Below are positions 19,001 through 45,528 of a stretch of 64,000 bases of DNA, piece after piece. The notes below the pieces were generated by a model that saw only the letters and a program-made list of their open reading frames with translations, did no database searches and was not told where the DNA came from. Numbering within the stretch: the first letter of the stretch is position 1; each line of letters opens with the position of its first letter. The DNA lies in the IMG/VR virus record IMGVR_UViG_3300020473_000011, positions 217,558 to 281,557 of that record, one strand, 5' to 3'. Made by a program: the position numbers and the translations under genes.

Positions 19001-22000
19001 ATCATTTGAGGTGCCCACAGGCTTAGGCACTAGCGGATCAGTCGGTGCTGATGTTCGTGGTGCATTACGGCCATTCATAGGGTCGGCCGCCGCAGAGGTC
19101 GGAAACCCTCTGTTAGCCAGTATCGCATCGGCCATCGACGCTGTTGTGCTGCCTACTAAGTTGAAATTGAAGGATAGCGGGGCTTCCATCATGATGCGGT
19201 CAAGCGCATAACGTATAGCATACTTTAGCTCTTGTAATGCGTTTTGATTCGTCACTATATAGCGTAGTGTGTCGGCTATATGCGATTTAGTAGCACTTAC
19301 CTTGAAGAGCTGAACCAAGTGGTTTGACGCATGAAGCGACAAGGCACTTGTTGGCGCATAGCCAAGTGCGTCGGGTGCCGTGAAAGTATAGAGCTGCACA
19401 GGGTACGCCAGCATAGGCTCCGCGTATTGCATGCCACGACCTGTCACCGTCATGTTAACGTGCTTAGCGTCTCTCATGCGGTTAGCCGTCACTTGTAGGG
19501 CACTCATCGGCGCGCCTACCTTTGAGGTTAGGTGGCTTAGCTCTGCCATGGTCAGCTTTGTCGAGGCAAATGCGCGGTTGCTTTCTACGTACGAAGCTAA
19601 CCAGCGGTCTATTTTATCTTTCCCAGACCAGACACTACGTGTGGCATACGTACTATCAAAACCAGCTAGCGGTGCTTTAACACGCCATGATTTAATAACT
19701 TGTGAAAGTCCCAGTCTGTTCGTCTTAGTGAATGCCGAGCGTAGAGCCTCTAGCACGGTTTCCCCATGCGAAGAGGCTGACGAGGTGCCCTTTGTATCAC
19801 CTTGAAAGTCTGAACTACGGTGGAGTGATGCAAGCACTGTGTCATACCCCATCGCGATATGACGGCGAGCATGCGTGTAGTACTGCTGGTCGTAACCTAA
19901 TACCTCTTTTCGCTGGTATTGGCCAGCCACAAAAAGGCCATCAAAGGCTTGAAAGGGTACCTGATAGCGAATACCCCTCATATCTTCGTCAGCAATAGAG
20001 ATTGCACGCTTATCGCCTGTGAATAAAGCTGCTTGAGTCATGCTCTTTCGTGACGGGTAGGCCGCGCCGTATGACGCATTAGCACCCTCGTGGATAGACC
20101 TCGATACAAACGTAAAAGTCCATGTCTTGTAGGCAAGTCTACCCGCCAGCGTATTCAGTCCAATAAAGTACTGAACATCCGAATACGTCATCACGTTATG
20201 ATAAGTACGTGATGCAATTGTTCGATTGGTTTCACCGTTAGACAGTGCGCGACTGTAGTCAATATCTTGTGAAAAGCTGGTGCCTCGTTGCATTCCCTCA
20301 GAGTTAAGTAACTGGCGCTGAGCCGAGCGACTGTAGAGCATCATCATGCGCATGAACGGATCAGCCGTTGCTGCTTGCGTACCATGTATACCTGTTTTTG
20401 TGCTGTAACCCGAACGTGAAGTAAATTGACGCGCTAGGTAGGCGTGAGCCGTGTTTGCCCAGTTCCGAATGCTTGTCTGCTGGATCTCAAACTTAAAGTT
20501 ACCCACGGACAAGTCAACGTTCGACCTTAATAGCTTGTAGGACGCATCCATCGTGCGCACTGTTACGGTACTACCCAAGGCGTAGTTATGTTTGTTCGCA
20601 TGGTGTGCTGAACTACTTTGCATTACACGTGCTGAGTTATCATTTGTTTCATGGGATGTCTGGTAAAGGCCAACCATTGCATTTGTGTTCGTACTCGCAC
20701 GCGTAGACGGGGCGGAGATACCCACACGTTGAGGCTTAGCCTTGTAGTTGTCCCAAAAACCAGTCGTTAGCCTGACGTGGCGAACTTGGTCAACAGCGAA
20801 GCTTGGGATCTCAGGCGTCTTGTTCAAATCAGACGTCGACAGGTAGCATCGTATTTGATAACCCGTAAGTGTTCCATCTGCTGGTAACTGCTGTGGCTCG
20901 TTAGAGTATTCGGTGTACTTAGTTGTTAAAGACGATTGGTCACGATACTGTAGGCGGAACTCCGTAAGTACCGAGGTGCCCGTCGGTATGACTGAATACA
21001 ACGACGGTTCAACGCTCTGAATAACACGAAGAGACTCTACCTTAATGACATCAGATTCAAAGCTACCCACCCAGAAGCCACTCGCTTCCACAGGGTCTGA
21101 TAGAAATAGGCGCTTTTGGCCATCGCTATCATACTGGAAGTCTGTGCCTTTCATTTCACCGTGAATGTCATCATGTAACGCTACTTCATCAACAGGCTCG
21201 TAGACTTCGACTCGGCTCCTGAAATGAAGGCCATCCATCACGTTGTACTGACGCTCAAGTCGCAATTCTTCATCAGTTACCCATGCAACCTGCGTGCTTG
21301 ACTCCGTACCTTCGCTATCGGTAACAACCAATGTGCTGCCGTCACTAACAACCAATAATGGGTCACCGTCATGCCCTAGTGAAAAAGATTGGCTCTCGTA
21401 GTGCTCGCCCACAAGGCAATCACTAACACTCGGTAGATTAAAATAATCCGCCTTTTCTTCAAATAATATAACGGTCTCTGGTTGCTCACTATTAACTGCA
21501 CCGTTAGTCTTCTCAATAGACTGGATGACCGTTGAGACCTCTGCACCATCAGGCTCGCTGATGGCGACCATCGTCACGACATAATTACCATGCCATGTGC
21601 TGTAGTAACCTTTGCGCTGCACGACGATTGGGTCTTCGTTTAGGGTCTCTGATTCTACGCTGTATAAATCAACAAGTAGCGAGCTGGCAAGGTCTAAGCA
21701 GTAAACTTCACCCGTAACCCGTGCCGAGAAAACAACTAAAGAATTGTGAGCGTAAGCATGACCCACCTCGAAAGGAAGGGGCACCTCTTCAACGGTAAAC
21801 TCGTCAAATGAAATAAAGTAAACAGCCGTCGTTGATACCGCAACAATGCTACGAGAATAACCAAGCCACATTACGTGGTTTATATCGGCAACACCCTCTA
21901 CGTAACGAAATGGCGCAAAGACAAGGCAGCCATCAGGATCTTGCTGTACATAGAATACATCAATATGATTGCGAGTATTTCCTACCACCCACAACAGGTC

Positions 22001-22378
22001 TTCTGCCCACACGACATCGGTTGCAGGGTCGGAGAGGGTGATCGTTTGTTGATGCTCAAGGGTTGGAGAGAAGACCTCAATGGTTCCTCGGTCGGTCAGG
22101 ACTAAGACAACCTCTTTGCCTTCAATTGTACCGCTTATGGCACGCTTAGGGGCGTCGACCTCGACCACATAAACAATGTCATGGCCAAGCGGTGTTACGG
22201 CAACCACGTAGTTCTCAGCATGGTTATGCAGATACACGAGTCCTCTGTTATCGGGTATAACAGGCGCAACAAGCTGGTCTTTTTTATTAGACCACCATGA
22301 CCACTTACGGTCTAAATCGTCTACAAACGCTCTTAATTGAAGCGCGTCAATGCTTTCTCTTACACTCAAACTCGTCAC
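13052..22378 (-). CDS. Giant 3108-aa protein, putative virion structural or fibre protein
   Basis: 9.3-kb uninterrupted ORF; beta-rich N-terminal ~550 aa, then long Ser/Thr/Ala-rich quasi-periodic region and a 14-aa repeat tract. Function inferred from position only. Confidence 0.75.
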   Translation of the reverse strand: MTSLSVRESIDALQLRAFVDDLDRKWSWWSNKKDQLVAPVIPDNRGLVYLHNHAENYVVAVTPLGHDIVYVVEVDAPKRAISGTIEGKEVVLVLTDRGTIEVFSPTLEHQQTITLSDPATDVVWAEDLLWVVGNTRNHIDVFYVQQDPDGCLVFAPFRYVEGVADINHVMWLGYSRSIVAVSTTAVYFISFDEFTVEEVPLPFEVGHAYAHNSLVVFSARVTGEVYCLDLASSLLVDLYSVESETLNEDPIVVQRKGYYSTWHGNYVVTMVAISEPDGAEVSTVIQSIEKTNGAVNSEQPETVILFEEKADYFNLPSVSDCLVGEHYESQSFSLGHDGDPLLVVSDGSTLVVTDSEGTESSTQVAWVTDEELRLERQYNVMDGLHFRSRVEVYEPVDEVALHDDIHGEMKGTDFQYDSDGQKRLFLSDPVEASGFWVGSFESDVIKVESLRVIQSVEPSLYSVIPTGTSVLTEFRLQYRDQSSLTTKYTEYSNEPQQLPADGTLTGYQIRCYLSTSDLNKTPEIPSFAVDQVRHVRLTTGFWDNYKAKPQRVGISAPSTRASTNTNAMVGLYQTSHETNDNSARVMQSSSAHHANKHNYALGSTVTVRTMDASYKLLRSNVDLSVGNFKFEIQQTSIRNWANTAHAYLARQFTSRSGYSTKTGIHGTQAATADPFMRMMMLYSRSAQRQLLNSEGMQRGTSFSQDIDYSRALSNGETNRTIASRTYHNVMTYSDVQYFIGLNTLAGRLAYKTWTFTFVSRSIHEGANASYGAAYPSRKSMTQAALFTGDKRAISIADEDMRGIRYQVPFQAFDGLFVAGQYQRKEVLGYDQQYYTHARRHIAMGYDTVLASLHRSSDFQGDTKGTSSASSHGETVLEALRSAFTKTNRLGLSQVIKSWRVKAPLAGFDSTYATRSVWSGKDKIDRWLASYVESNRAFASTKLTMAELSHLTSKVGAPMSALQVTANRMRDAKHVNMTVTGRGMQYAEPMLAYPVQLYTFTAPDALGYAPTSALSLHASNHLVQLFKVSATKSHIADTLRYIVTNQNALQELKYAIRYALDRIMMEAPLSFNFNLVGSTTASMADAILANRGFPTSAAADPMNGRNAPRTSAPTDPLVPKPVGTSNDVVGINTRLDNGGNMPAAQKLVFSQAKGTSDVAELFYEVLSNWSIDSGVDKVRFTRALLSSDSAEDVSYLMSRLSTAGTDIINLVRDDQDVPAAELVKFLTAAYLTSSLPETVSYDARESNAFSSTIELLYNALARSSVADDDVTFTLNSQSGFISTVALRLFRDAAYKWQRAAFDVGTGNRVAQAQVVPFEMQSGSAWNYSDGLKIPSRVHRSTLAQAKGLGYVNHTIKKFATTIDLNKMGYLFSSEARLIPFGKHKASTKENTLQLHKVSGMSTRTDRLTFTVEKSRSGFMDAVPFAMGETKVSLNVVPLRLTEARSEAESVLEYYMAQTSINRFSTVPLRVQGFLGTSKSSTLVARGAKTGAELVKGQAFTLQPFTRVENKVDLRIIEVENYSLTASNFDVQRAGVPMFPQPVGMDVISGSTYYQDLVKLIRSQAISPKNTQTLDTALHASTTLMDSAQLAIDSGITRVLNGVDFETKSNTSTQINAVLIGRDAVSNIEAEAVAYNTNDWLKAVKSNLVDWAFSQLKAIPKGVFTKVDKNSRVLSDLVNFKLDKVGITIDELIKLVTADSISAHREELPFTKASWTNVQVGTQLVTSKLSSTQQDIYHRQGHDLNRKHVKAVTLTSEPSVRYWVDRIETSAVQRTSRLSSDASVVAGTDYASNLVETTVEYQTLRQAIEHGVASTVVMSQDTTADGLLYTRVAGGQTHYEDGLPLSTVKTTELQGSAKLTRGGHIRTELNNVSLASLTSYAAHLGERLLLVRDRQLTKEIGVNYQNQDALTILEQAVLLNRLAQRALQNKVTLSKESSMEIAGLQTTHMRLMDNFVEQLPEVANFNIAGSQIKAMNDVLMQSETSYNAIMNDVAMLVMEPHSLAMKHVESVVMRWAKYLADVTGTKLQINTMETAVELIKITMDNVPKIDTTSEVFGTTIRLADAHSKVMQPLINLHETMAVKEGYAENPVLTDVALEVLRGFNPKFAAVDLAKATDFHLAMAGAQMEKATTEHYKHMKIPSVTDALGRHMRVKTVKGYKPRDGKFMSTTYMSKFQPFALTMTKSDFHVSGSLQLINGRKALTRYVTQRIELTPWSQADSMRLKSIEMKVAKASLNLQEVKFDSLTGFRSTLSQKAEYWFPKFRHTFPYGLPNWLQDYGHISQSLGRSHIQSPYRASTDQIMGTQELELIKKKTDSLSLSQDILTKQVNPTTSTAVRMTGEQWVKPQQHAAPMMQGARYHQVMMPTAPSISIVGSAWVKMLDQIKGVGSSVLYKQSAMGQRIPVTVETDRWVIPTRTFVENYRLPKWTQRYDQHTLSRIIHSVQLEVSAVDVNRRYDQDVRTRPDVKITDVIRLRNAQAHDYVNKDFIRIESEYVNADVTYTKWSPFDVFSNAIHFEQLDNYSEVFSGTGYHQLSESRYATHTKFYQTLTSEMATKTDIKKRFTPHVRPTSTAYSLSLPVGVPLGHAANKAYVPIRDIVSTDFWIAMRRDGRGYSLLNDRPIGLRDKVSSSDIRITDMKRINPQNVSSIAKKIEIVLRKTITKLADSLDFERLAAPSESQLYQKWVANLTEVAIDHWDFKQQKVALSEKEHDEVVKVMRENWFGNQWYAQKPESMTEFYHAMRQALAETTDSYQSYKQSLESDSAIYNKLVQSDLVAPEIYNALLQAGLSVTQADMFFAQAKEVSKAHYMRLKQYQLGQGELFADVAQAGLGDTESYNKFDQSNLGDTALYDEYDQESVSAKRLDRLYEQYEQGLASLYSSLKAMGLSDARIDEAYAQATGAEAGGVLHSKYASYQDMVNAVGQAYEQYLLSDPVANMHYRMMKPMDTADYAKLVGNILPTFDIIDRYKQAAVAKSDDLFVEYAVDMATVLDSIDYSLMKPLPFHDRVDVNLPIKFRSEDFRRYKAGIVQIDLMQWLRDLRTKYREELIEKVQNGTARGTYSPRAAMIEAIRNGVVEPILYRDPDDGSWLYRRYTLGDTEYGYVIWGNLA

Positions 22379-22556
22379 CGTCTCAATAGAACCTGCTTAG
22401 TTAGCTTGCAGGCTGTCAGCTCAAATCTTGTCTCACATATATTCACTATTGTACAGTGCATCGCCAGTTGTAGCCAGTATTGTACAATGATTTGAAGGTC
22501 TGAGGGCTTCGCAGGTAGCGTGGGGCAGGCTAGACGATGGGCAGGTAATGCTGCAC

Positions 22557-22596: not shown

Positions 22597-23817
22597 CTAC
22601 TTCTTCTTTTTAACTTCTGACTCTGGAATACCAGCGTCAACAAGATGAAGCATAATCAACTGCGTGTTGTATGGACCTGTCGGTTGGATGGCCACATAAC
22701 GACGGTACAGCTTCTCGCCAGAATCTGGGTCAGTCTCACCATACACGTGTACGTTAACTGGTAAGCCTGAGCTGATCACGTCTGCTGAGGTGAACGCAAC
22801 CATATCCATTTCTGATTTGAAGCGGAAACGTGCCGTGTTCAAGCGTGATGGGAATAAGATGGCGTAACGAGAACCCGCTTTTTCCACACTTGCAACACCG
22901 ATGTCACGCATTTCGATACGTGCTTGTTGTTGACGTAAGTTAACCACGGCGTTCGAGTCGCGGCTATTACGCCATGCGTCAGCTTGACGTGAAGGTGCAT
23001 TTACATCCTTCTCGCGTACAACAAAGCGCTTAACACAGATCGCACCGTTCTTAGTTGCGCCACTAATAGGCACATTATGCTGCTCAGCATACTCTTCGAA
23101 GAATTGCTGGTGGGCAGGCGTACGCTGGTTAGCCTCGTTAGAGATACCATACAACGCAAAGATCGGGTTACGACTACCAACAGGGTCAGCATCGCGAAGA
23201 GGCTCACCTGATGACTGGTCAACAGGGCGCTGAATAACGAACCAGCTTTGTGTCGGTGGATCACGCTGCTCGTCACCTTCTAACCACATACATAAGAAGA
23301 TACCGTAGTCTGTCACCGAGCCACGCCATGAAACAGGGTGTGCACGAAGGCGGCCTTTAACCACTGACGTATCGAAAAACGCACCTTGGCCGTTTTCAGA
23401 ACGCTTAGTTTCAACGGTATCAATATATGAGTACTCGTCGGCATGGCCTAGGTTACCCGATGGAATACCACGTGCATCCTGAATTACACCACCGTTACCT
23501 AAATCGCACTGTAGTAAGGTCGTTACCTGTGTCGAAATAGTTTGGTAGTTAAAGCTTGAATCAGCATGACCAGACTGGAACTGATTATTGCTGCTCATCT
23601 TGAGTGCAATCGGCTCATCTTCAAATAGATTTGTGCTATCACCAAGCGGCATGGCTAGGAAAGAGTAATCACTGTTATCAGTGAACTTCTCAAGCGAGTT
23701 CGGGAACTCATGTTTAATTTCCCAGCCCACAGTTTCCAACCAGCGCGCGATGTCGAATAACATCACGCGTAGGTCGCTGTAGCCGTATTTTACTGTACTG
23801 TCTACAGAAATTGACAT
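22597..23817 (-). CDS. QRPVD-family putative structural protein, A-type (406 aa)
   Basis: PTQSWFVIQRPVD, GSRNPIFALYGI, FVVREKDV, FPSRLNTARFRF, AFTSADVIS. Confidence 0.75.
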   Translation of the reverse strand: MSISVDSTVKYGYSDLRVMLFDIARWLETVGWEIKHEFPNSLEKFTDNSDYSFLAMPLGDSTNLFEDEPIALKMSSNNQFQSGHADSSFNYQTISTQVTTLLQCDLGNGGVIQDARGIPSGNLGHADEYSYIDTVETKRSENGQGAFFDTSVVKGRLRAHPVSWRGSVTDYGIFLCMWLEGDEQRDPPTQSWFVIQRPVDQSSGEPLRDADPVGSRNPIFALYGISNEANQRTPAHQQFFEEYAEQHNVPISGATKNGAICVKRFVVREKDVNAPSRQADAWRNSRDSNAVVNLRQQQARIEMRDIGVASVEKAGSRYAILFPSRLNTARFRFKSEMDMVAFTSADVISSGLPVNVHVYGETDPDSGEKLYRRYVAIQPTGPYNTQLIMLHLVDAGIPESEVKKKK

Positions 23818-23831
23818 TGTCTCACCTCAAC

Positions 23832-25748
23832 TTAAATTTGGTTATCTTTAATGGTACCTAGACGACCACCGTACCAACGCATTAGCATACGCATGCCTGT
23901 GTTGTACTTACCCGTCGAAGGTAGACCTTTATAAAGACGCGTCGTGCTTTCCCACTCACCGCCGTTTGCTTCACACGAAGCTTGGTCGGCATGGCCTGTC
24001 ACTGAACACACGCCTTCGTCGTACATAGCAAACTCAGAAAGTGCACCATTACTGATAACGTCCGCTGAGGTGTAGCCAATTAAGTCGGCTTCTTCTAGGT
24101 ACAGGTAGCGCTGCGTTGTTAAGCCTGACGGTACCGTGATTACGTACTCGTAATCTTCTGATACAGCAACTTGCTCAAACGTATTCAGCACCGCATTTGA
24201 ATCTGGCGCGTCTTCACCTGCGTTCAGCTCTTCACTTGGACGGTGGATGTCCGATTCACGTACCACGAAGTACATCGACTTCTGGAATTTCTCGTGATAA
24301 ACACCATACATACAGAAAAGTGGGCAGAATGACTTATTCTGGTCAACGAGTGGTGCACCTGTGTCCTTATCAACTAGACGTTGGATATTCAGCCAGCTAA
24401 AGCGGTGACCTTCATTCGTTTCGTATTGGTCAACAGCCTGATCCCATACTGCTAGAACAATACCGTGGTCAGACACAGTTAATGCGTAAGACATCGGAAC
24501 GTTTAGCGCGCCTTCCCGTGGATCACGTGCTTCACCATCGGTATCAAATGAGTTTTGCGCCATAGGGATCAACTCATAACGGCTGTTGTCATAAACTTCA
24601 ACACCGATGTTAGCTGTATCATCAATCGTCGTTAGATCCGTGATGGCGTGCTCTGTTAGCGTCCATACAGCATCACGCGCAGAGTCGTTAGCGAATTTAA
24701 CGCGCCAATCGAAGCTAAAGGCTGTGCCCGCATTCTTAACATCAATGCGCCAACCTTTTAGCTCTGAGTAGCTACCCTTCACAGTGAAGGCCACCTGCTG
24801 TGCTAGACCGTTTTCGTCACGTTCAGTACCTACTATAGCATCGGCGTCGATTGACGGTGGTAGGTCGCCCACTACTTTATAAGTAATGTAGCGCTGACCA
24901 TCTAGGTCTGCTAGGGTCTGGCTACCGTACTCTTTAAAGTAAAGCGTACACTTTCTTGGCTCGTATACAGGTTTCTTTAAGAGGTGGCCATAATCCGCGT
25001 CAGAAGGTGGCGTACGTTGTGAGTAACGACCTGATTCAGGGAAAGTCGCATTTAAGTCAACTTCCGATGCGTTCGTCATTTCGAACCATTCGATGTCAAG
25101 CTCGTACGTCACGCGACCCGATGTATCAAGACCCGCGACAGGTTCGATACGACGGCTGCCCCATACTTCTTGTGGTAGGCCACCACCTGATAACGGCTTT
25201 AAGTACCATTTAAGATTACCGTATGGGTCAGTTGATTGAACTTGAGTAACACGCGTATGATAAACCGCACGGTTAATAAAGCCATTTTCTTTATAGGCTT
25301 CATCAGTCATACGTAGACCGACAAAACCTAGCGTGCCCATCGTTGAGACTTGGTCAGCAAGATATTCTGTGTTCGGTGGAATATACGGAATTGCTGGTGC
25401 TTTTTTCTTGCCCCAGTCAATTTGCAGTGGTGTGGTTACGTTAATGTGACCCATACCATGGCCAATGCTATGTTGTGTATCAAAGCGGATAACCCAAGGT
25501 TGCTTCGCTTCAACACCATCCACACAAGCGTCGATATGCGGTGTAGCCTGAATAATGATCACGTCATTCGCAGGGCTGTTTGGATTTGTAAAGTCTAAGT
25601 CACTAATATCGGTAGGATAAGTGATCTCAAATGCGTTGTTATCTGCGCCATCGTAGAACTCTGTCAGGTCTTTTACAACAGACGTGAATAGCTCTCTTGG
25701 CGTCGCAAAACCGCCACGTGTGACGGAATACGGCTCAAATGCTGCCAT
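23832..25748 (-). CDS. QRPVD-family putative structural protein, B-type with large insertion (638 aa)
   Basis: PYSVTRGGF, PMSYALTVSDHG, QRLVDKDTGAPL, FVVRESDIHRPSE. Confidence 0.75.
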   Translation of the reverse strand: MAAFEPYSVTRGGFATPRELFTSVVKDLTEFYDGADNNAFEITYPTDISDLDFTNPNSPANDVIIIQATPHIDACVDGVEAKQPWVIRFDTQHSIGHGMGHINVTTPLQIDWGKKKAPAIPYIPPNTEYLADQVSTMGTLGFVGLRMTDEAYKENGFINRAVYHTRVTQVQSTDPYGNLKWYLKPLSGGGLPQEVWGSRRIEPVAGLDTSGRVTYELDIEWFEMTNASEVDLNATFPESGRYSQRTPPSDADYGHLLKKPVYEPRKCTLYFKEYGSQTLADLDGQRYITYKVVGDLPPSIDADAIVGTERDENGLAQQVAFTVKGSYSELKGWRIDVKNAGTAFSFDWRVKFANDSARDAVWTLTEHAITDLTTIDDTANIGVEVYDNSRYELIPMAQNSFDTDGEARDPREGALNVPMSYALTVSDHGIVLAVWDQAVDQYETNEGHRFSWLNIQRLVDKDTGAPLVDQNKSFCPLFCMYGVYHEKFQKSMYFVVRESDIHRPSEELNAGEDAPDSNAVLNTFEQVAVSEDYEYVITVPSGLTTQRYLYLEEADLIGYTSADVISNGALSEFAMYDEGVCSVTGHADQASCEANGGEWESTTRLYKGLPSTGKYNTGMRMLMRWYGGRLGTIKDNQI

Positions 25749-25936
25749 TGCTCATTTCCTCGTTACTTTAGTCTCAGCACCATTGATACGGCGATACTGC
25801 AATCTCAGGTGTAGTTATGATTGTACAACGGATGTGCAGGCGTTGTACAACGGAGACTATAAAAAACTTACAAGAAGCAACCTAGGGAAAAACTGCACAC
25901 TAGGCCACTTCGTCAATTAATACCTTAAAACGTTCT

Positions 25937-27283
25937 TTAGTTTTGAGGCGGTGCGTCAGCGTCGATCTCAGTCAGCATTAGAACCGTCATATTCGTGTTG
26001 TACGAGTTATTCGGTGTTAACGCTGTGTACTTACGATAGCGCGCTTGGTTCTCAAGTACCTTACCGTCGGCATCTTTCGCACCTTCGTTGTAAACATTTA
26101 CACGAATAGTAAGCTGTGGCGCGATAACGTCACTACTTGTATACGCGATCATGTCAAGGTCATGCTGATAGCGGAAGCGCTTAGTGTTTAAGCGGTTAGG
26201 GTACAAGATAACGTACTTTGCACCCGCCAAAATAAAGCTACCTTGGTTGGTGGTCTCTGAGCTAGCTCGGAACTCAACACGCGTCTGCTGTTGCACTTCG
26301 TTTAACCACGCATTCGAGTCACGCGTATTACGAGTGGCATCTTCTGGGTAAGTTGGTTTAAGTACGTCTTTTTCGCGCACAGTAAATTTCTGTACGATAC
26401 CCGATAGCGGACGTAACGACACAGGTGTTGCCATACCGATTGGCACTTGGCCATTCATATCGTAGGTGTACGTCGTGCGGTCGTCAGTAAAGCCATACGT
26501 ATCATAGATGTGTTTGTTGTAGATACCGTACATACAGAACACAGGGTTACGACTGCCTAGTGGATCAGGGTCTTGTAGGGCGTTACCTGTCTTTTGGTCA
26601 ACAGGACGCTGCACACAAACCCAAGATTGCGTAGGTGAGTCACCCGCTGATTGGTCGTCAGACTCAATCCAATAAGCGAACACAAAGCCACGGTTTGATA
26701 CTGATAAACGGAAGCTCATTGGGTAAGCTCGTAGCATTCCGTTGAACTCACGCACGTCGATGAAGTTCAACGTTTGGATATTGAAGCCATGCGCAGGGAT
26801 CGGGTCGTTCTTGATTGAGTTCACTGCTGATGACGCGCCCATCACAACCACATCGCGGTAGTTGTGTGGTACTGTATGCGGTGATTCACCTACGTGGCCA
26901 CACACATAGCCGCGAAGGTTAGGGATAGCCTCATCATAGTCATCACCTAATTGAAGTGGGGTTGCCACTTGGATCTGACAGGTGTACTGGCTATCGGCCG
27001 TCACACGAATACGCCAAGGTTCTTCATCGTGAAGCATGTTAACTGCATCAGTCGTTTCAAGCACGGCTTCGATGTTTTGTGGATTAGCTGGATCGAATGT
27101 GATTGGCGTACGTGTGATTAACGTAAAGCCATTCGCAATCATGAGTTGCAGCCAATCCGAGACCATTTCACGTACGTCGGTAAAACCGTCACGCGTCACA
27201 GTCGTTACAAATTGCGTATCACCACTTGTTAGTGGTGCTGCTAGGGTTGACGTGTAAACGTCACCGTTGATGTTTAGTGCCAT
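25937..27283 (-). CDS. QRPVD-family putative structural protein, A-type (448 aa)
   Basis: PTQSWVCVQRPVD, GSRNPVFCMYGI, YPNRLNTKRFRY, AYTSSDVIA. Confidence 0.75.
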   Translation of the reverse strand: MALNINGDVYTSTLAAPLTSGDTQFVTTVTRDGFTDVREMVSDWLQLMIANGFTLITRTPITFDPANPQNIEAVLETTDAVNMLHDEEPWRIRVTADSQYTCQIQVATPLQLGDDYDEAIPNLRGYVCGHVGESPHTVPHNYRDVVVMGASSAVNSIKNDPIPAHGFNIQTLNFIDVREFNGMLRAYPMSFRLSVSNRGFVFAYWIESDDQSAGDSPTQSWVCVQRPVDQKTGNALQDPDPLGSRNPVFCMYGIYNKHIYDTYGFTDDRTTYTYDMNGQVPIGMATPVSLRPLSGIVQKFTVREKDVLKPTYPEDATRNTRDSNAWLNEVQQQTRVEFRASSETTNQGSFILAGAKYVILYPNRLNTKRFRYQHDLDMIAYTSSDVIAPQLTIRVNVYNEGAKDADGKVLENQARYRKYTALTPNNSYNTNMTVLMLTEIDADAPPQN

Positions 27284-27297
27284 TAGTCAGCCCCTTC

Positions 27298-28638
27298 TTA
27301 ATTTCCGCCCGCAGGAATGATGCCCGACACGCCAATGTTGTCTTGCGTCATAATCGCGTTGTTATACCAGCGCATTAAGATGCGTAAGCCCGTATTGTAC
27401 TCACCCGTTGCACGTAAGCCTTTGTAGCGCTTCTTCGTACCGTCTTCGTACATAGATAGCTCGGCGATGCCGTCTTGTGAAATGATGTCTGCTGAGCAGT
27501 AGCCCATCAAATCCATTTCCTCTAAGTACATGTAACGTTGCGTGTTCAAACCAGACGGGATAGTTACAACGTACTCGTAGTTCTCCGTCACGCTGATCTG
27601 TTCAAGCGGGTTGATTAGGGCAACACTATCTCGCGTGTTGATTGTCGCGTCTAAGTCTTCACTTGGACGATGCACGTCTGATTCACGCACTACGAAGTAG
27701 CGTGTCTCATTCAGTGTTTGGTTTTGAATGCCGTACATACAAACAAGCGGCGCGTGGCTCTCTGCTTGGTTGATTAGTGGTGCACCTGAGTCTTTGTCGA
27801 CTAGACGTTGTGCTGCGAACCAGCTGTGACGACAACCTGTATGGTCGTACTGGTCGGTTGCTTCTTCCCAGATAGCTAACATAATACCGTGGTCTGATAC
27901 AGTTAATGCGTAAGACATTGGAATGTTAGGCGTACCCGCAACGGCAACCTGTGCTGTATCAGGGAACTTGTCTTCGAACTCACGCTTTGCATCATATAGT
28001 GGACGACGGCAGAAAAAGCCTTTGTCTTCAATTTCTAGACGTAGCTGGTCGTTAGGGTCACACCACGAAACTTGCTTGTCGATAACGGGAATACGTCGAC
28101 CTAAGAAACCCAGTGTACCTTCAACAACAGGGTCGTCATTCTTGCCGCCTTTGTTCGGTGGCGTGTAGTCATAGAGCTGCCAGTCACCTTGTGCAGGTTT
28201 AAATAACTGTAACGGCGTCGATACGTTAATGTGAAGGTTACCAATCTCTGGTGCCTTATCATTACGGTCTTCACGACGGTTATTATGACTCGGGTGACAT
28301 TGCTTACCTACACCTGAATCAAAGCGAATGATCCATGGTTGCGGTACGACTGATACACCGTGAGTCGCGCGCTCAGGGTCTGCACCTGCTAGGTGGTCTA
28401 CGAAGCCAGTAGCTTCGATAACGAACACCGATGAATCAAACGACAATGGGTCGCTCAGATCAGGGTTGTCCGATGGGTATAAAAGTTTGAAAGCATTCTC
28501 TGATGCCGTAGGGTCATCAGGGTGCTCATAATAATCTGTTAAATCACGGACAACCGACGTAACCAGCGCTTTAAGCGTAGTGAAACCACCACGTTCAATG
28601 CTGTACGGTTGGAAATCCGCTCTCATTTCAAATGCCAT
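27298..28638 (-). CDS. QRPVD-family putative structural protein, B-type (446 aa)
   Basis: PYSIERGGF, PMSYALTVSDHG, QRLVDKDSGAPL, FVVRESDVHRPSE. Confidence 0.75.
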   Translation of the reverse strand: MAFEMRADFQPYSIERGGFTTLKALVTSVVRDLTDYYEHPDDPTASENAFKLLYPSDNPDLSDPLSFDSSVFVIEATGFVDHLAGADPERATHGVSVVPQPWIIRFDSGVGKQCHPSHNNRREDRNDKAPEIGNLHINVSTPLQLFKPAQGDWQLYDYTPPNKGGKNDDPVVEGTLGFLGRRIPVIDKQVSWCDPNDQLRLEIEDKGFFCRRPLYDAKREFEDKFPDTAQVAVAGTPNIPMSYALTVSDHGIMLAIWEEATDQYDHTGCRHSWFAAQRLVDKDSGAPLINQAESHAPLVCMYGIQNQTLNETRYFVVRESDVHRPSEDLDATINTRDSVALINPLEQISVTENYEYVVTIPSGLNTQRYMYLEEMDLMGYCSADIISQDGIAELSMYEDGTKKRYKGLRATGEYNTGLRILMRWYNNAIMTQDNIGVSGIIPAGGN

Positions 28639-28720
28639 AAGTTGTTAACTCCGTCACATCGGCAGCCATTGCTGCGATTAAAAGCCCAGTTACATGTCCG
28701 CGACGAGCGCGGTCTAGCAC

Positions 28721-28732
28721 CATTGTACAATG
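28721..28732. promoter_or_regulatory. Palindromic operator-like site
   Basis: Perfect CATTGTACAATG, paired with a second core at 28757. Confidence 0.7.
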
Positions 28733-28776
28733 AATGTGCAGAGTATTACAGTTTCATTGTACAACCATTGATGCCG

Positions 28777-29673
28777 TTATGCTGTGCGAAACATCACACT
28801 GATCCCCGCGTTGTCTGCCTCAGTACTAACCATACTGTGGTAGATGCGCTGGGAGTTGAAAACTTCCATGTTCAAATTGGCGTTAGCCGATACGAGGTCA
28901 GTATTAGCAAAGCCAATAATGTCGAATACACCCTCGTAGCTAAAGCGCTCCGTAGAGAAATTGTTCGGAAACTGGATTATGTAATCACGGTTCTCCGCAA
29001 TCTCCTTCAACTTAACAGTGTGCATGACACTGTTTCGGTTGTAGACGTAATCAATTGCGGTAGTGGCTGGGGCAGGGACGGGTATATCACTCTCCCGAAC
29101 CAGCAATTGCTTTATGTCAGCTGTAAAACGGTTAAACGTACCACTCAATGCCAGTACAGGGTTGTGTACCGTTGGGATAACAATACCTGTTTCCCAATCG
29201 ACAGGTTTTTGTACGCAAAGCCAACTCAGCTGACGTTCGGGGCTATCCACCACGGCATGCTCCCATATCGCGATAGCAAACCCATGGCTGTCAGCCGTGA
29301 ATAGAAGAGAGAAGGGGCGGTTATACTTGCCGTGGGTACCGAGTCGGTCTCGACGGAACCAGTACCCCAACTCATTCGGCGTGTCTGAGGTATTTAGACT
29401 TCCGACAACCCGTGCGTATAAGTCACCCGTCGTGCTTTCTACCTGCATTGGCGTCGCAATGTTCAAGCGTAAGCGCTGTTCGTCACTCGATAGCTCGAAG
29501 CGAACTACCCACTCTTGGTCGTACGAGTTTACGTCCAAGGCGATTCGAGGCTTCATAAGCAAGACACGACCGTCTTGCTTCTCTATGATCTCAAAATGGT
29601 AGTTGGCCTTCTCTTTGAGAGCTTCAAAAACTTCCCTCAAGTCGACAAGGCCATGTCGGAAAAAGCTAAACAT
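28777..29673 (-). CDS. QRPVD-family putative structural protein, short form (298 aa)
   Basis: NIATPMQ, SWLCVQKPVDWETG, LLVRESDIPVP, FPNNFSTERFSY. Confidence 0.7.
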   Translation of the reverse strand: MFSFFRHGLVDLREVFEALKEKANYHFEIIEKQDGRVLLMKPRIALDVNSYDQEWVVRFELSSDEQRLRLNIATPMQVESTTGDLYARVVGSLNTSDTPNELGYWFRRDRLGTHGKYNRPFSLLFTADSHGFAIAIWEHAVVDSPERQLSWLCVQKPVDWETGIVIPTVHNPVLALSGTFNRFTADIKQLLVRESDIPVPAPATTAIDYVYNRNSVMHTVKLKEIAENRDYIIQFPNNFSTERFSYEGVFDIIGFANTDLVSANANLNMEVFNSQRIYHSMVSTEADNAGISVMFRTA

Positions 29674-29681
29674 GCTCTGCC

Positions 29682-30338
29682 TTACACGCCTGTGAAACCG
29701 TTACCGATTGCGTTCATATCTAGGTTACTCGTGTCGTCTAACGAAAAGGTACTTGAGACTGTTTCCATGCCATCACTGACCATACCAACTGATTCACTTT
29801 CTAGGCCATCAGTGCCACTTGCTTTCTTACCTAGCGACTCAGTCTGCTTCACGGTTGTGAAACCTGCGTCTTTAAGCCCGCTAAGTTGTACTGTAGCCGT
29901 CGCGAAGTCGATGTCGCCTTCACCGTCTTCTTGTGGGAATGACTTGCGCTCAAGCTCGGCGGTAACGCTAAAAGCATCGCTTTCGAACTCAGCGTCAACA
30001 GCTGGGATCAACGTTTCTTCTGCCCACGTTACAAACTCACCTACGAACTCGTCACCGTTAGACTCGCTATTTACTGTCACTTCCCACTCAAGGTCGTCAC
30101 TGTTTAATTGACGTAGTGACGGTGTCAGTGTTGGCCAGTCCCACTTCATCATCGCGTTAAAGCCTTTGATAGTATCAGTTAGAAAGCCCTGAACACGCGA
30201 TACGGTCTCTGTGCCTGCGTCGGTCAGTGTTAGGTTTTCGAGTTCTTCGCCAATATTCGATGAACCGCCACCAATACTTGATGAACCACCACCTACAAGG
30301 GCTTCATAACGTTCTAGGATTGTATTTGCTCGTGTCAT
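29682..30338 (-). CDS. Acidic hypothetical protein
   Basis: Start MTRANTILERYEA, Gly/Ser linker, very D/E-rich. Confidence 0.65.
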   Translation of the reverse strand: MTRANTILERYEALVGGGSSSIGGGSSNIGEELENLTLTDAGTETVSRVQGFLTDTIKGFNAMMKWDWPTLTPSLRQLNSDDLEWEVTVNSESNGDEFVGEFVTWAEETLIPAVDAEFESDAFSVTAELERKSFPQEDGEGDIDFATATVQLSGLKDAGFTTVKQTESLGKKASGTDGLESESVGMVSDGMETVSSTFSLDDTSNLDMNAIGNGFTGV

Positions 30339-30370
30339 TATCACAGTCTCACTTTAGTTGTTGTTTAAGG

Positions 30371-31450
30371 CTACGACATCATTGCCGTTAGCCAGTTACT
30401 TGATTCGTCTTGTACACTACGAACGTGTTCGCGTATCTCTGAACCGTTGATCATGATAAACATGATCGTCCCTGATGTTTCTTGTGCATGGTTGATAACC
30501 GATTTGTACTTACGGGCTATCTGCTCACGAAACACCTTAGAAAATTCTATGTTTTGCATGCTGCCAAACAGACGGGCTTCACTGAATGCGACTAAGTCCA
30601 TTACATGCCTGTAACGGTATCGCCGAGTGTTGAGGTTGTGCGGGAAAAAGACCTTGGCCGTGTTTTCTTCGGTGTAGTAATTCACCTCTGCATCCCAGTG
30701 CGGCATGATGGCATTTTCCATGCGCTTAAACTGCCACGCGGGTTGTGACTTAGTCGGCACCACCACGTCAGATTCACGAACAACAAACTTATTGCGCTTA
30801 TGGCCAAAACCATTTTTTATCTCATAGGCTGCAAAGACAGGTGACATTTCGCTAACTAGTGGCTCACCTGATTCGGGGTCAACTGGGCGCTGTACGCACA
30901 GCCAGCTAAACCATGAACCATCATGCCACACGCTGGCATCATCGAACGTCTCTTCATACGTAAAGAACACAAAGCCTCTGTCGGTAAGCGTTAATACGTA
31001 GCCCATCGGATAAGCAGGCGCTGCTTTGCTTAGGTACGTTCGGTCAATAAATGGAATACCCACATTACCAATGTCACTGCCAATAACACCAACATGATCC
31101 CAGCCGAGCAGCTGTTCGTATTCCCCAAGCACTTCTGTTAAGAACCCCGTATCAGGTAGCTGTAAGTCAGGTGCGACATAGACGCGCGCCTGATCCCATT
31201 CAACCTTAAACATGATACGGTACGAGTACTGCTTACCTGCCAGCATTGCGTTACCCTCGGGCAACACTTCGAGCAGACAAGAGAAGGGGATGTCATCTTC
31301 GAGCAGCTTCGGATGTAGTAGGAAGTCGTTCTCGCCTTGTTGAATAGTTACCGACGTAAATGAGCCAGCCTCGACCATGTCGATGACTAGTTCTTTCATC
31401 ATTGTAACGTGGCTTTTAAAACCGCTACGGTGGAACGAGTAACCTGCCAT
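30371..31450 (-). CDS. QRPVD-family putative structural protein (359 aa)
   Basis: YSFHRSGF, SWLCVQRPVDPESGEPL, FVVRESDVVVP, FPHNLNTRRYRY. Confidence 0.75.
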   Translation of the reverse strand: MAGYSFHRSGFKSHVTMMKELVIDMVEAGSFTSVTIQQGENDFLLHPKLLEDDIPFSCLLEVLPEGNAMLAGKQYSYRIMFKVEWDQARVYVAPDLQLPDTGFLTEVLGEYEQLLGWDHVGVIGSDIGNVGIPFIDRTYLSKAAPAYPMGYVLTLTDRGFVFFTYEETFDDASVWHDGSWFSWLCVQRPVDPESGEPLVSEMSPVFAAYEIKNGFGHKRNKFVVRESDVVVPTKSQPAWQFKRMENAIMPHWDAEVNYYTEENTAKVFFPHNLNTRRYRYRHVMDLVAFSEARLFGSMQNIEFSKVFREQIARKYKSVINHAQETSGTIMFIMINGSEIREHVRSVQDESSNWLTAMMS

Positions 31451-32029: not shown

Positions 32030-32476
32030 TTAGCGTGCAGCTATACGACCACCCGTATAGGCGACGTATACTTCTAAGTTGTGGTGCTTGGCACGTGCAA
32101 TCATGTCCCGCGTTCCAGCGGAGTGTCCGTCCCAAAGGGCGATTAAGCCACCTCGTGACTGCGCCGCATAGCAAGCCATGTCTTCGTTTCGTAAGAAGCC
32201 CGCTTCTAAGTTCGGGTCTTCTGAGTCACCCCAGTCAGGCTCAAAGTCTTCCACATGGATGCCGTGTGCTTTGGCATATTTAACACCGAGTGCATCGCCC
32301 CCTAAAGCCGTTCCGTTTACGACCTCCGTGATGTCCCAGCCGAACTTGGTAACAGCCTTAGCGACTGCGCGTTCAAGCAGCGGGTAGTCCCGCATCGTTA
32401 GATGACGTGAGCCTGCTATTATCAAACGAGTAGTCTTTATCTTTCGTGTAGGGGGAGTCTTAGTGAAAAGCGCCAT
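32030..32476 (-). CDS. SLOG-superfamily (DUF2493/YspA-like) protein
   Basis: IIAGSR, VVNGTALGGDALG, RNEDMA, WDGHSAGTRDMI. Confidence 0.75.
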   Translation of the reverse strand: MALFTKTPPTRKIKTTRLIIAGSRHLTMRDYPLLERAVAKAVTKFGWDITEVVNGTALGGDALGVKYAKAHGIHVEDFEPDWGDSEDPNLEAGFLRNEDMACYAAQSRGGLIALWDGHSAGTRDMIARAKHHNLEVYVAYTGGRIAAR

Positions 32477-34634: not shown

Positions 34635-34744
34635 ACTTTCTCATCTCGTCTCAATTAAAATTGTACTACCCACAGCGGGTAGTACGCACCATTGTACAAC
34701 ACTTTTTTGCGGCGTGATAGTGTTGTACAAAATCTAGCAACGGC

Positions 34745-36367: not shown

Positions 36368-36576
36368 ACTGGCTCCGTATCTCTGTCTCAATTAAATGTG
36401 ATTATTCGATAATCATTGTACAAGGATATTATAGCCATAATCACTATTACTTTTCAGCAAAACAATCTAATTAATTTAGCTAGCGACGCACCATTGGAAG
36501 GTGCTATTATGCAGCCGAGTCCAACGGACTCATTAACTGATACTTATGAAAAATTGAATAACGAGGGAAGAACCCT

Positions 36577-45408: not shown

Positions 45409-45528
45409 TATTATCTCACTTTTTCATTGTCTCAATTAAGGGCGCTGCCAATAAAAAAGAGGCAGCCCGCACCATTGAGTATACAATGGTTAGGGCTGCC
45501 TAGACAGTCTAAAGATACGATTAATCGC

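What the first reader, a model, noticed from the sequence alone, without database searches (positions are those of the whole stretch)
22597..31450. Six-member QRPVD paralog family containing a duplicated promoter-B-A unit
Seen: six genes share SWxxxQ(R/K)(P/L)VD..(S/T)G.PL, (F/L)(V/T/L)VRExD(V/I)xxP and (F/Y/V)PxxL(N/T)TxR(F/Y). 27298-28638 pairs with 23832-25748 (B-type) and 25937-27283 with 22597-23817 (A-type); DNA identity persists (AGTTAATGCGTAAGACAT at 27901 and 24478). Each B gene is preceded by its own pair of TTGTACAA sites (28723/28757 and 25821/25843). Inference: two separately regulated alternative structural modules (tail, baseplate or fibre-base rings) feeding into the giant protein downstream.
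Basis: partly seen in the sequence, partly recalled or inferred. Interest (0 to 1): 0.7.

Follow-up and report, generated by a model that had tools for sequence, protein, structure and literature searches.

The report
Six paralogous phage tail-appendage proteins
A giant marine phage carries six diverged copies of one virion protein that databases wrongly call "tail sheath"; its predicted fold matches only the paired building blocks of the side arms on the baseplate of phage JBD30.

Summary
Six minus-strand genes between 22597 and 31450 form one family, with an A pair, a B pair and two singletons. A seventh ORF in the span (29682-30344) is unrelated. All six match phrog_12249, labelled "tail sheath". 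That label is wrong here: the canonical sheath, tube and a 1634-aa large protein lie about 27 kb away, outside the window.

AlphaFold models of two paralogs each give one strong structural match (Z 16.4 and 16.8; next best about 5). It is gp47 of siphophage JBD30. gp47-gp48 heterodimers stack to form that phage's lateral baseplate arms. No sequence similarity to gp47/gp48 is detectable.

The PaBG homologue is a Coomassie-visible virion protein. The adjacent B-A pair is predicted to form a pseudo-symmetric dimer through the conserved PxxLNTxR(Y/F) motif (ipSAE 0.61, best control 0.00).

All six genes keep their order in three diverged relatives and are under purifying selection. One of them carries a fast-evolving 260-aa insert.

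TTGTACAA is a genome-wide intergenic motif, not special to the B genes.

Best reading: co-assembled heteromeric tail or baseplate appendage subunits, not alternative modules. Moderately interesting; a new variant of a known kind.

The parts
30371..31450 (-). Paralog 1 (359 aa), a singleton type and first gene of the array
   Evidence: phrog_12249 at E 5e-38. AF2 model has pLDDT 88 and pTM 0.89. Its only strong PDB match is JBD30 gp47 (8rk3_c), Z 16.4 over 254 residues.
29682..30344 (-). Unrelated 220-aa acidic ORF in a variable slot between paralogs 1 and 2
   Evidence: No PHROG or Pfam hit and no similarity to the family. The slot is empty in L015/L016 and holds three other genes in L013.
28777..29673 (-). 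Paralog 2 (298 aa), the minimal and most divergent member
   Evidence: phrog_12249 at E 2e-31. It sits on a long branch in the tree. Orthologs are present in L013, L015 and L016.
28639..28776 (-). Intergenic region upstream of B1: TTGTACAA at 28723-28730 and 28757-28764, AATGGTGC at 28717-28724, and a GC hairpin CCGCG..CGCGG
   Evidence: TTGTACAA sites are kept at this position in L013 and L015.
27298..28638 (-). Paralog B1 (446 aa)
   Evidence: phrog_12249 at E 6e-58. It forms a 100/99 clade with the 638-aa gene. It is predicted to bind A1, ipSAE 0.61 against a best control of 0.00.
25937..27283 (-). Paralog A1 (448 aa)
   Evidence: phrog_12249 at E 3e-59, covering profile positions 3-365. 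It forms a 100/100 clade with the 406-aa gene. It was the partner chain in the complex prediction.
25749..25936 (-). Intergenic region upstream of B2: a possible hairpin followed by a T-run after A1, TTGTACAA at 25821-25828 and 25843-25850, and AATGGTGCTGAGAC at 25771-25784
   Evidence: AATGGTGCTGAGAC and the TTGTACAA sites are conserved upstream of the B2 orthologs in L013 and L015.
23832..25748 (-). Paralog B2 (638 aa): the family core plus an inserted domain of about 260 aa
   Evidence: phrog_12249 at E 9e-58. AF2 model has pLDDT 81. Its only strong PDB match is again JBD30 gp47, Z 16.8 over 263 residues.
24519..25301 (-). Inserted beta-rich domain of B2 (about aa 150-410), fast-evolving
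   Evidence: The insert is absent from B1. Orthologs are 24-56% identical here and 66-92% in the core. No fold match was found.
22597..23817 (-). Paralog A2 (406 aa), last gene of the array
   Evidence: phrog_12249 at E 1e-43. 35% identical to A1, E 9e-71.
13052..22378 (-). Giant 3108-aa ORF directly downstream, with its own TTGTACAA at 22480-22487; function unknown
   Evidence: No Pfam, PHROG or PDB sequence hit. The N-terminal 600 aa give only a beta-propeller lead, score 0.85. A giant gene is kept at this position in the relatives; it is split in L016.

Best explanation
The six genes encode paralogous virion proteins with the two-domain fold of JBD30 gp47/gp48. In JBD30 these are the subunits whose heterodimers stack into the lateral arms ('tail fibres') of the baseplate. 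They are not tail sheath.

**Proposed mechanism.**
- Neighbouring paralogs (B1 with A1, B2 with A2, possibly the 359-aa with the 298-aa protein) form pseudo-two-fold dimers. The contact runs through the conserved C-terminal PxxLNTxR(Y/F) strand region.
- These dimers assemble together into a peripheral tail or baseplate appendage.
- Variable insertions, above all the 260-aa insert of B2, are exposed and probably contact the host surface.

**Origin and expression.** The B-A-B-A order arose by tandem duplication of a two-gene unit in an ancestor of this Pseudoalteromonas-associated jumbo-phage lineage. All units are expressed from the same promoter class.

**Shown:** family membership, pairing, fold match, virion presence of one homologue, conservation.
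**Inferred:** the heterodimer, the location on the virion, host contact.
For: **Fold.** Two independently modelled paralogs each give JBD30 gp47 (8rk3_c) as the single outlier: Z 16.4 over 254 aa and Z 16.8 over 263 aa, with the next best about 5. Foldseek gives probabilities of 0.97-0.98 for both a 317-residue and a 305-residue JBD30 baseplate chain, the lengths expected of gp47 (318 aa) and gp48 (307 aa).

**JBD30 biology.** gp47 and gp48 are tandem paralogs next to the tape measure gene. Three heterodimers form each baseplate arm (PMC11445458).

**Virion presence.** PaBG RefSeq gp225, counted from Met5, weighs 34,777.7 Da. That equals the paper's gp261 (34,778.16 Da), band 10 of CsCl-purified virions.

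**Complex.** B1+A1 scores ipSAE 0.61 (three runs: 0.57, 0.65, 0.61) against a best control of 0.00. That mark was reached by 58 of 80 solved complexes and 2 of 110 mismatched pairs. The three runs agree in at least 79% of contacts, and the partner's pLDDT is at least 79. The interface is reciprocal and uses the conserved motif: B1 332-352 and 365-372; A1 317-340 and 364-373.

**Conservation.** The six-gene order is kept in L013, L015 and L016. dN is 0.11-0.29 with saturated dS.

**Insert.** It evolves much faster than the core. Some JBD30 gp47 homologues likewise carry PA14 or F5/8-type-C inserts.

**Tandem paralogs elsewhere.** NCTB has 5; Lu11 and Y3 have 2 each. 0305phi8-36 gp158-160 are MS-confirmed virion proteins in the baseplate module; they are matched to the BFVD hits by length only.
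Against: - No sequence or profile similarity to gp47/gp48: hhalign probability below 1%. Common descent is therefore inferred from fold alone.
- JBD30 is a siphovirus. No structure places this fold on a contractile tail.
- The cluster here is not next to the tube and 1634-aa large-protein genes as it is in JBD30, Y3 and NCTB. It lies about 27 kb from the sheath.
- The dimer prediction cannot tell a specific heterodimer from generic family self-association, because close cousins of a true partner also pass. It also used my own alignments.
- Paralogs in other lineages (Lu11, Y3, NCTB) are lineage-specific duplicates, and PaBG has a single detectable copy. An ancient obligate A/B split therefore does not exist.
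- No virion proteomics or expression data exist for this phage itself.
Confidence: 0.55

Rival explanations
1. The proteins are the 'hairs' or whiskers that line the contractile tail of the hairy-Myoviridae subgroup (Lu11, Y3, AD1, JA phages, PaBG). Stacked dimers would polymerise into long thin fibres attached along the sheath or at the neck rather than forming baseplate arms.
For: - By sequence, the family is confined to exactly this phage subgroup plus Atu_ph07 and Phosso.
- JBD30 shows that dimers of this fold can stack into a fibre-like arm.
- The PaBG homologue is abundant enough to stain with Coomassie.
Against: - The morphology of this uncultured phage is unknown.
- The only solved example sits on the baseplate.
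- Copy number (1 in PaBG, 2 in Y3, 6 here) has not been related to hairiness.
Confidence: 0.2
2. One reading: the two B-A units are alternative, separately regulated modules. Different virions or infection conditions would use one or the other, for example to vary host range.
For: - Each unit has its own upstream motif cluster.
- B2 carries a fast-evolving insert that B1 lacks.
- A tyrosine recombinase gene lies 11 kb downstream.
Against: - Both units carry the same motif class, which is also used genome-wide.
- Both units are retained intact, in the same order and under purifying selection, in three diverged relatives.
- No inverted repeats flank either unit.
- The A1-A2 and B1-B2 divergences are deep (35% and about 50% identity), as expected for subfunctionalised subunits.
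Confidence: 0.12
3. The database label is right: these are additional tail-sheath subunits, a multi-component sheath.
For: - phrog_12249 and about 30 RefSeq records call the family 'tail sheath'.
- PaBG is reported to have a two-component sheath.
Against: - PaBG's two sheath proteins are the 58-kDa gp76 and gp213, not its 35-kDa family member.
- This genome has a canonical sheath (phrog_23, E 4e-73) with a tube gene beside it.
- The six paralogs have no Pfam sheath domain.
- Of 48,161 PDB representatives compared with the two models, only two reach Z >= 5 in each search and the only strong match is JBD30 gp47, so no solved sheath chain matches either model.
Confidence: 0.03
4. They are virion-borne enzymes. 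JBD30 gp47 was described as a member of the nitrilase-superfamily hydrolases.
For: The JBD30 paper's remark on gp47, and the invariant acidic residues in the VRExD motif.
Against: - Neither the six paralogs nor JBD30 gp47/gp48 hit any Pfam family.
- The family has no conserved Cys or Lys that could make a nitrilase-type Glu-Lys-Cys triad (established knowledge); the invariant columns are G, Q, P, E and D only.
- No enzyme fold appears among the structural matches.
Confidence: 0.03

Closest known systems
JBD30 gp47/gp48 'tail-fibre-forming' virion structural proteins (PDB 8rk3/8rk5; phrog_687)
   Same: - Same two-domain fold over essentially the whole chain (Z 16.4 and 16.8).
- About 300-aa core.
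- Encoded as tandem diverged paralogs in the tail module.
- gp47-gp48 heterodimers are rotated 180 degrees relative to each other within the arm, and the dimer predicted here is pseudo-two-fold.
- Some homologues carry inserted binding domains.
   Different: - No detectable sequence or profile similarity.
- The host virus is a jumbo phage with a contractile-tail gene set, not a siphovirus.
- Six paralogs instead of two.
- The cluster is not adjacent to the tape measure or Dit genes.
- The JBD30 paper describes the dimer interface differently, and it was not compared here.
phrog_12249 family of the Lu11 / PaBG / Y3 / AD1 / NCTB jumbo phages (for example Lu11 gp246-247, Y3 gp151-152, PaBG gp261 by the paper's numbering)
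   Same: - Clear sequence homologues at 25-40% identity.
- The same conserved motifs.
- Tandem copies next to a very large ORF.
- The PaBG member has been detected in virions.
   Different: - Those phages have 1-2 copies (NCTB has 5), and their copies are lineage-specific duplicates.
- Here there are four deep types (A, B and two singletons), with a duplicated B-A unit.
- The database name 'tail sheath' is not supported.
Bacillus phage 0305phi8-36 gp158-gp160
   Same: - Three tandem paralogs of 267-293 aa.
- Confirmed as virion proteins by mass spectrometry.
- Located in the baseplate and fibre module.
- Their BFVD models match the paralog model at Foldseek probability 1.00.
   Different: - The match is weak (TM 0.43-0.58, E about 6e-4).
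- Their identity with BFVD entries A7KUT2-4 is inferred from lengths and consecutive accessions only.
- Their position on the virion is unknown.

Membership tests
phrog_12249 (labelled 'tail sheath') | Significant match to the family profile | tested here: met
   All six match at E 1e-31 to 1e-59. A1 covers profile positions 3-365 of 370.
Contractile-tail sheath proteins (T4 gp18 / P2 FI type; phrog_23) | Sequence match to sheath profiles | tested here: not met
   The six have no Pfam hit. The genome's real sheath (L018:8544-10421) matches phrog_23 at E 4e-73 and five other sheath PHROGs, and has a tube gene next to it.
Contractile-tail sheath proteins (T4 gp18 / P2 FI type; phrog_23) | Sheath fold | tested here: not met
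   In the VIA-align search of 48,161 PDB representatives, only two chains reach Z >= 5 for either model, and the only strong match is JBD30 gp47 (Z 16-17, next best about 5).
JBD30 gp47/gp48 baseplate-arm proteins (phrog_687) | Shared three-dimensional fold over the full chain | tested here: met
   Z 16.4 (254 aa, rmsd 3.8) and Z 16.8 (263 aa, rmsd 3.9) to 8rk3_c, which is gp47; the next hit is at Z about 5. Foldseek probability 0.97-0.98.
JBD30 gp47/gp48 baseplate-arm proteins (phrog_687) | Detectable sequence or profile homology | tested here: not met
   hhalign of the 99-sequence family profile against gp47, gp48 and a 48-sequence gp47/48 profile gives probabilities of 0.1-0.9%. hmmsearch does not find gp47/48.
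JBD30 gp47/gp48 baseplate-arm proteins (phrog_687) | Tandem paralogs that heterodimerise | tested here: inconclusive
   The tandem paralogs are present. B1+A1 is predicted to bind, ipSAE 0.61 against a best control of 0.00; that mark was reached by 58 of 80 solved complexes and 2 of 110 mismatched pairs. Specificity against homodimers or cross-pairs was not tested, and there are no experimental data.
JBD30 gp47/gp48 baseplate-arm proteins (phrog_687) | Gene position directly after the tape measure gene and before Dit | tested here: not met
   In JBD30 the order is gp46 (tape measure), gp47, gp48, gp49 (Dit). Here the cluster is about 27 kb from the sheath, tube and 1634-aa large-protein module. 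In Y3 and NCTB the homologues do follow the tail module.
JBD30 gp47/gp48 baseplate-arm proteins (phrog_687) | Location as lateral arms on the baseplate | not testable with these tools
   This needs cryo-EM or immuno-EM of a cultured relative.

The most novel reading that the evidence does not exclude
The six paralogs each occupy one fixed position in a hetero-hexameric appendage. It would be the subfunctionalised equivalent of the JBD30 arm, where three identical gp47-gp48 heterodimers fill six positions. Three gene pairs (359+298, B1+A1, B2+A2), each in its own transcription unit, would supply three different layers, with the B2 insert as the distal host-binding tip. The same polymerising module may be the unidentified 'hair' protein of the hairy jumbo myoviruses.
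Probability: 0.15. Interest if true: 0.7.

Novelty: new variant of a known kind. Interest (0 to 1): 0.5.

Why it matters
- **Annotation error.** The finding corrects a label that has spread widely. 'Tail sheath' is attached to phrog_12249, and about 30 of the phage records listed in the two searches here, mostly RefSeq, carry it.
- **Scope of the fold.** The building block of the JBD30 baseplate arm has been seen once, in a small siphovirus. This links it to a whole clade of jumbo phages with contractile-tail gene sets, and to about 420 metagenomic protein clusters.
- **Open question made testable.** It gives a candidate for the unassigned hairs or appendages of the hairy jumbo myoviruses.
- **Evolution.** It is a clean natural series (1, 2, 5 and 6 copies) for studying how duplication of a dimer-forming subunit builds more complex virion appendages.

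Tried and rejected
- **Near-identical DNA.** A megablast of the region against 50,697 phage records found nothing.
- **Pfam.** No hit for the six paralogs, their neighbours, the giant ORF, or JBD30 gp47/48.
- **Family profile against PDB sequences.** No hit.
- **Profile-profile against gp47/48.** No signal.
- **The B2 insert.** The Atlas search gave only a weak T4 gp8 lead at 0.68, and no structural match was found. Its fold stays unassigned.
- **The giant ORF.** No PHROG or PDB hit, and only a beta-propeller lead for its first 600 aa. BLAST found no similarity to the large ORFs beside the homologues in Y3, NCTB or Lu11.
- **Inversion or shufflon switching**, suggested by the nearby integrase-like gene. 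No convincing inverted repeats flank the units. Rejected.
- **Sigma-70 promoter and terminator scans.** Counts were at or below the shuffled expectation.
- **Homology of the two regions upstream of the B genes.** They do not align beyond the shared motifs.
- **A7KUT2-4 as the 'curly fibre' candidates of 0305phi8-36.** By length they are gp158-160, not the curly-fibre candidates orf119-121 or orf126-134.


Full report
**Setting.** The window is the last 64 kb of a 281,557-bp IMG/VR viral contig that CheckV rates 67% complete. Proteins 75-93% identical occur on a 400-kb metagenomic contig and in assemblies of Pseudoalteromonas citrea and Pseudoalteromonas sp. McH1-7. The element is therefore a jumbo phage of roughly 400 kb that is probably associated with Pseudoalteromonas. 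No cultured phage is close at the DNA level.

**Checking the observation.**
- Region 22597-31450 holds seven minus-strand ORFs. Six of them (359, 298, 446, 448, 638 and 406 aa) align over their whole length.
- Pairwise blastp E-values run from 1e-13 to 1e-78.
- The 220-aa ORF at 29682-30344 is unrelated.
- The A pair (448 and 406 aa) is 35% identical, E 9e-71. The B pair (446 and 638 aa) is 53% identical in the C-terminal part and 37% in the N-terminal part. The 638-aa protein carries an extra domain of about 260 aa.
- On a maximum-likelihood tree with 45 relatives, both pairs are clades with 100% support.
- Residual DNA identity is real: 66.5% over 448 nt, and the exact 18-mer at 27901 and 24477.
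- A profile search of every ORF on the 281-kb contig finds only these six.

**The TTGTACAA sites.**
The octamer occurs 29 times in the window against 2.1 expected. It occurs 149 times on the contig, 108 of them in the 18% that is intergenic. The extended palindrome is roughly aATCgTTGTACAAtGATt.
- Copies also precede the first paralog (31755), the giant gene (22480) and many unrelated genes.
- A second motif, cAATGGTGC(a)GAC, occurs 49 times. It lies 35-85 nt upstream of both B genes.
- Both motifs are kept at the same intergenic positions in the diverged relatives. AATGGTGCTGAGAC stands upstream of the B2 start in all three genomes (about 20 nt in L013 and L015, 23 nt here).
- The rest of the two upstream regions does not align.
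- The array is therefore probably cut into units: [359-(220)-298], [B1-A1], [B2-A2] and [giant]. All would be driven by the same class of regulatory site, which argues for co-regulation.

**What the family is not.**
- All six match phrog_12249, labelled 'tail sheath'. RefSeq copies that label in Lu11, Y3, PaBG, AD1 and many Erwinia phages.
- The canonical sheath of this genome lies outside the window at contig position 211.5-213.4 kb. It matches phrog_23 at E 4e-73.
- Next to it are a tube gene (phrog_45), a hub-like gene and a 1634-aa large protein that may be the tape measure.
- The two sheath proteins reported for PaBG are 58-kDa proteins, not its 35-kDa family member.
- None of the six has a Pfam domain. 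A structure search turns up no sheath-like match (see below).

**What the fold is.**
- An AlphaFold2 model of the 359-aa paralog, built on a 99-sequence alignment, has pLDDT 88 and pTM 0.89.
- Foldseek against the PDB ranks two chains of the JBD30 baseplate first, at probability 0.97-0.98.
- An independent VIA-align scan of 48,161 PDB representatives gives 8rk3_c at Z 16.4 (254 residues, rmsd 3.8), with the next hit at Z 5.0.
- A second model, of the 638-aa paralog (pLDDT 81), gives the same single outlier at Z 16.8 over 263 residues.
- Chain 8rk3_c is JBD30 gp47. gp48 is its 307-aa tandem paralog.
- In JBD30, three gp47-gp48 heterodimers, rotated 180 degrees relative to each other, form each of three bent lateral 'tail fibres'. 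These attach to the distal tail protein and the upper baseplate protein, and they bind the type IV pilus (PMC11445458).
- There is no sequence-level signal between the two families: hhalign probability is below 1% even profile against profile. The relationship rests on fold, domain order, size and tandem-paralog genetics.

**Evidence that the family is structural.**
- PaBG has one member, RefSeq O152_gp225. Counted from its fifth residue (Met), it weighs 34,777.7 Da.
- That matches the 34,778.16 Da listed for 'gp261, unknown', band 10 on the Coomassie gel of CsCl-purified PaBG virions.
- The neighbouring RefSeq gp229 (57,162.2 Da) matches the paper's gp257 (57,162.97 Da), which fixes the numbering offset.
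- Weaker structural matches in BFVD include annotated virion structural proteins of siphophages (FoX4, KL1) and three entries, A7KUT2-4, of 293, 270 and 267 aa. These lengths are exactly those of 0305phi8-36 gp158-160, tandem MS-confirmed virion proteins in its baseplate module. That identification is by length and accession order only.

**Assembly.**
That mark was reached by 58 of 80 solved complexes and 2 of 110 mismatched pairs.
- The runs agree in at least 79% of contacts, and the partner's pLDDT is at least 79.
- The interface is reciprocal: B1 365-372 against A1 328-340, and A1 366-373 against B1 342-352. This suggests a pseudo-two-fold dimer.
- The tool warns that close cousins of a true partner also pass. 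The result therefore supports dimerisation within the family but not pair specificity.

**Evolution.**
- The order 360-296-445-449-650-402-giant is kept in L013, L015 and L016 at 57-85% protein identity.
- dN is 0.11-0.29 while dS is saturated, so dN/dS is about 0.1 or less where it can be computed.
- The slot between paralogs 1 and 2 is variable: the 220-aa ORF here, nothing in L015/L016, and three other genes in L013.
- The B2 insert is 24-56% identical between orthologs against 66-92% for the core. That pattern is typical of exposed, host-facing surfaces.
- Some JBD30 gp47 homologues carry PA14 or F5/8-type-C inserts.
- In other lineages the copies are lineage-specific duplicates: Lu11 246/247 are sisters, Y3 151/152 are sisters, and the five NCTB copies cluster together. 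PaBG has one detectable copy. Expansion is therefore recurrent, and there is no ancient universal A/B split.

**Interpretation.**
- Most likely (about 0.55): the six are co-assembled, subfunctionalised subunits of a peripheral tail or baseplate appendage built from pseudo-symmetric dimers. The B-A-B-A order reflects one tandem duplication of a dimer-encoding gene pair.
- Where the appendage sits is open. Baseplate arms, as in JBD30, are the only solved precedent.
- The sequence family is confined to the 'hairy Myoviridae' subgroup, whose hair proteins are still unassigned (PMC6143709). I give that variant about 0.2.
Shared motifs, strict co-retention and the lack of inversion repeats count against it.
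- 'Tail sheath' and 'enzyme' get about 0.03 each.
- The relation to the 3108-aa ORF is only adjacency. It has no family hits and only a beta-propeller lead at its N-terminus.

**Verdict.** This is a real, well-delimited paralog array. It is mislabelled in public resources and is best understood as an expanded jumbo-phage version of the JBD30 gp47/gp48 arm module. It is a new variant of a known kind, of moderate interest (0.5). Cryo-EM or virion proteomics of a cultured relative would settle its location and stoichiometry.

Noticed in passing
window-wide, e.g. 3501, 5666, 22480, 34692, 47943, 62091; contig-wide: TTGTACAA, with extended palindrome about aATCgTTGTACAAtGATt, occurs 149 times on the 281-kb contig, 108 of them intergenic. 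It often comes in pairs 22-53 nt apart. Some copies sit about 17 nt upstream of a TATAGT box, like a -35 element. It is probably a phage promoter or regulator site that falls into several classes.
   Followed up: partly
window 25777-25784, 28717-28724, 34686-34693, 36488-36495, 45469-45476 (minus strand) and 44 more places on the contig: A second over-represented motif, cAATGGTGC(a)GAC, occurs 49 times against about 9 expected for a random 8-mer. It is mostly intergenic and is conserved upstream of the B2 ortholog start in the two relatives examined (about 20 nt there, 23 nt here). It may be a late promoter or a transcript 5' element.
   Followed up: partly
window 10571-11842 (-): A 423-aa tyrosine recombinase or integrase-like gene (PF00589, E 7e-11; phrog_1, E 9e-29) lies among large unknown late-region ORFs just downstream of the giant gene. 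With near-identical gene arrays in Pseudoalteromonas genome assemblies, it raises the possibility of a temperate or episomal jumbo phage.
   Followed up: partly
window 13052-22378 (-); L016:14957-21332: The 3108-aa ORF has no family hits, and its N-terminal 600 aa give only a beta-propeller-like lead. The ortholog is 3054 aa on the metagenomic relatives L013/L014 and 2837 aa in L015; in the Pseudoalteromonas assembly L016 it is split into 739-aa and 2105-aa ORFs.
   Followed up: partly
window 29682-30344 (-); L013:4807-7606; L015 between 7533 and 7585: The slot between paralogs 1 and 2 is a variable insertion point. It holds a 220-aa acidic ORF here, three unrelated ORFs (308, 309 and 273 aa) in the 400-kb relative, and nothing in the Pseudoalteromonas assemblies.
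   Followed up: partly
window 32030-32476 (-): A 148-aa protein with a YspA/cpYpsA-related SLOG domain (PF10686, E 1e-10) lies just upstream of the paralog array.
   Followed up: no
public records: Lu11 gp246-247, Y3 gp151-152, PaBG O152_gp225, many Erwinia and Dickeya phages: The 'tail sheath' product name on this family in RefSeq and PHROGs appears to be a propagated misannotation. These phages each have a separate canonical sheath of about 550 aa.
   Followed up: yes
P0241, P0247, P0259, P0272 (JBD30 gp47 homologues): Some homologues of JBD30 gp47 are about 460 aa and carry PA14 or F5/8-type-C carbohydrate-binding domains. The arm-protein fold evidently tolerates inserted binding modules, which parallels the insert in the 638-aa paralog.
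   Followed up: no
L019:17676-20200 (Bacillus phage 0305phi8-36 ORF158-160): Three tandem MS-confirmed virion proteins of 293, 270 and 267 aa match the lengths of BFVD entries A7KUT2-4, which resemble the paralog model (Foldseek probability 1.00, TM 0.43-0.58). The fold may recur as tandem paralogs in an unrelated giant myovirus.
   Followed up: partly
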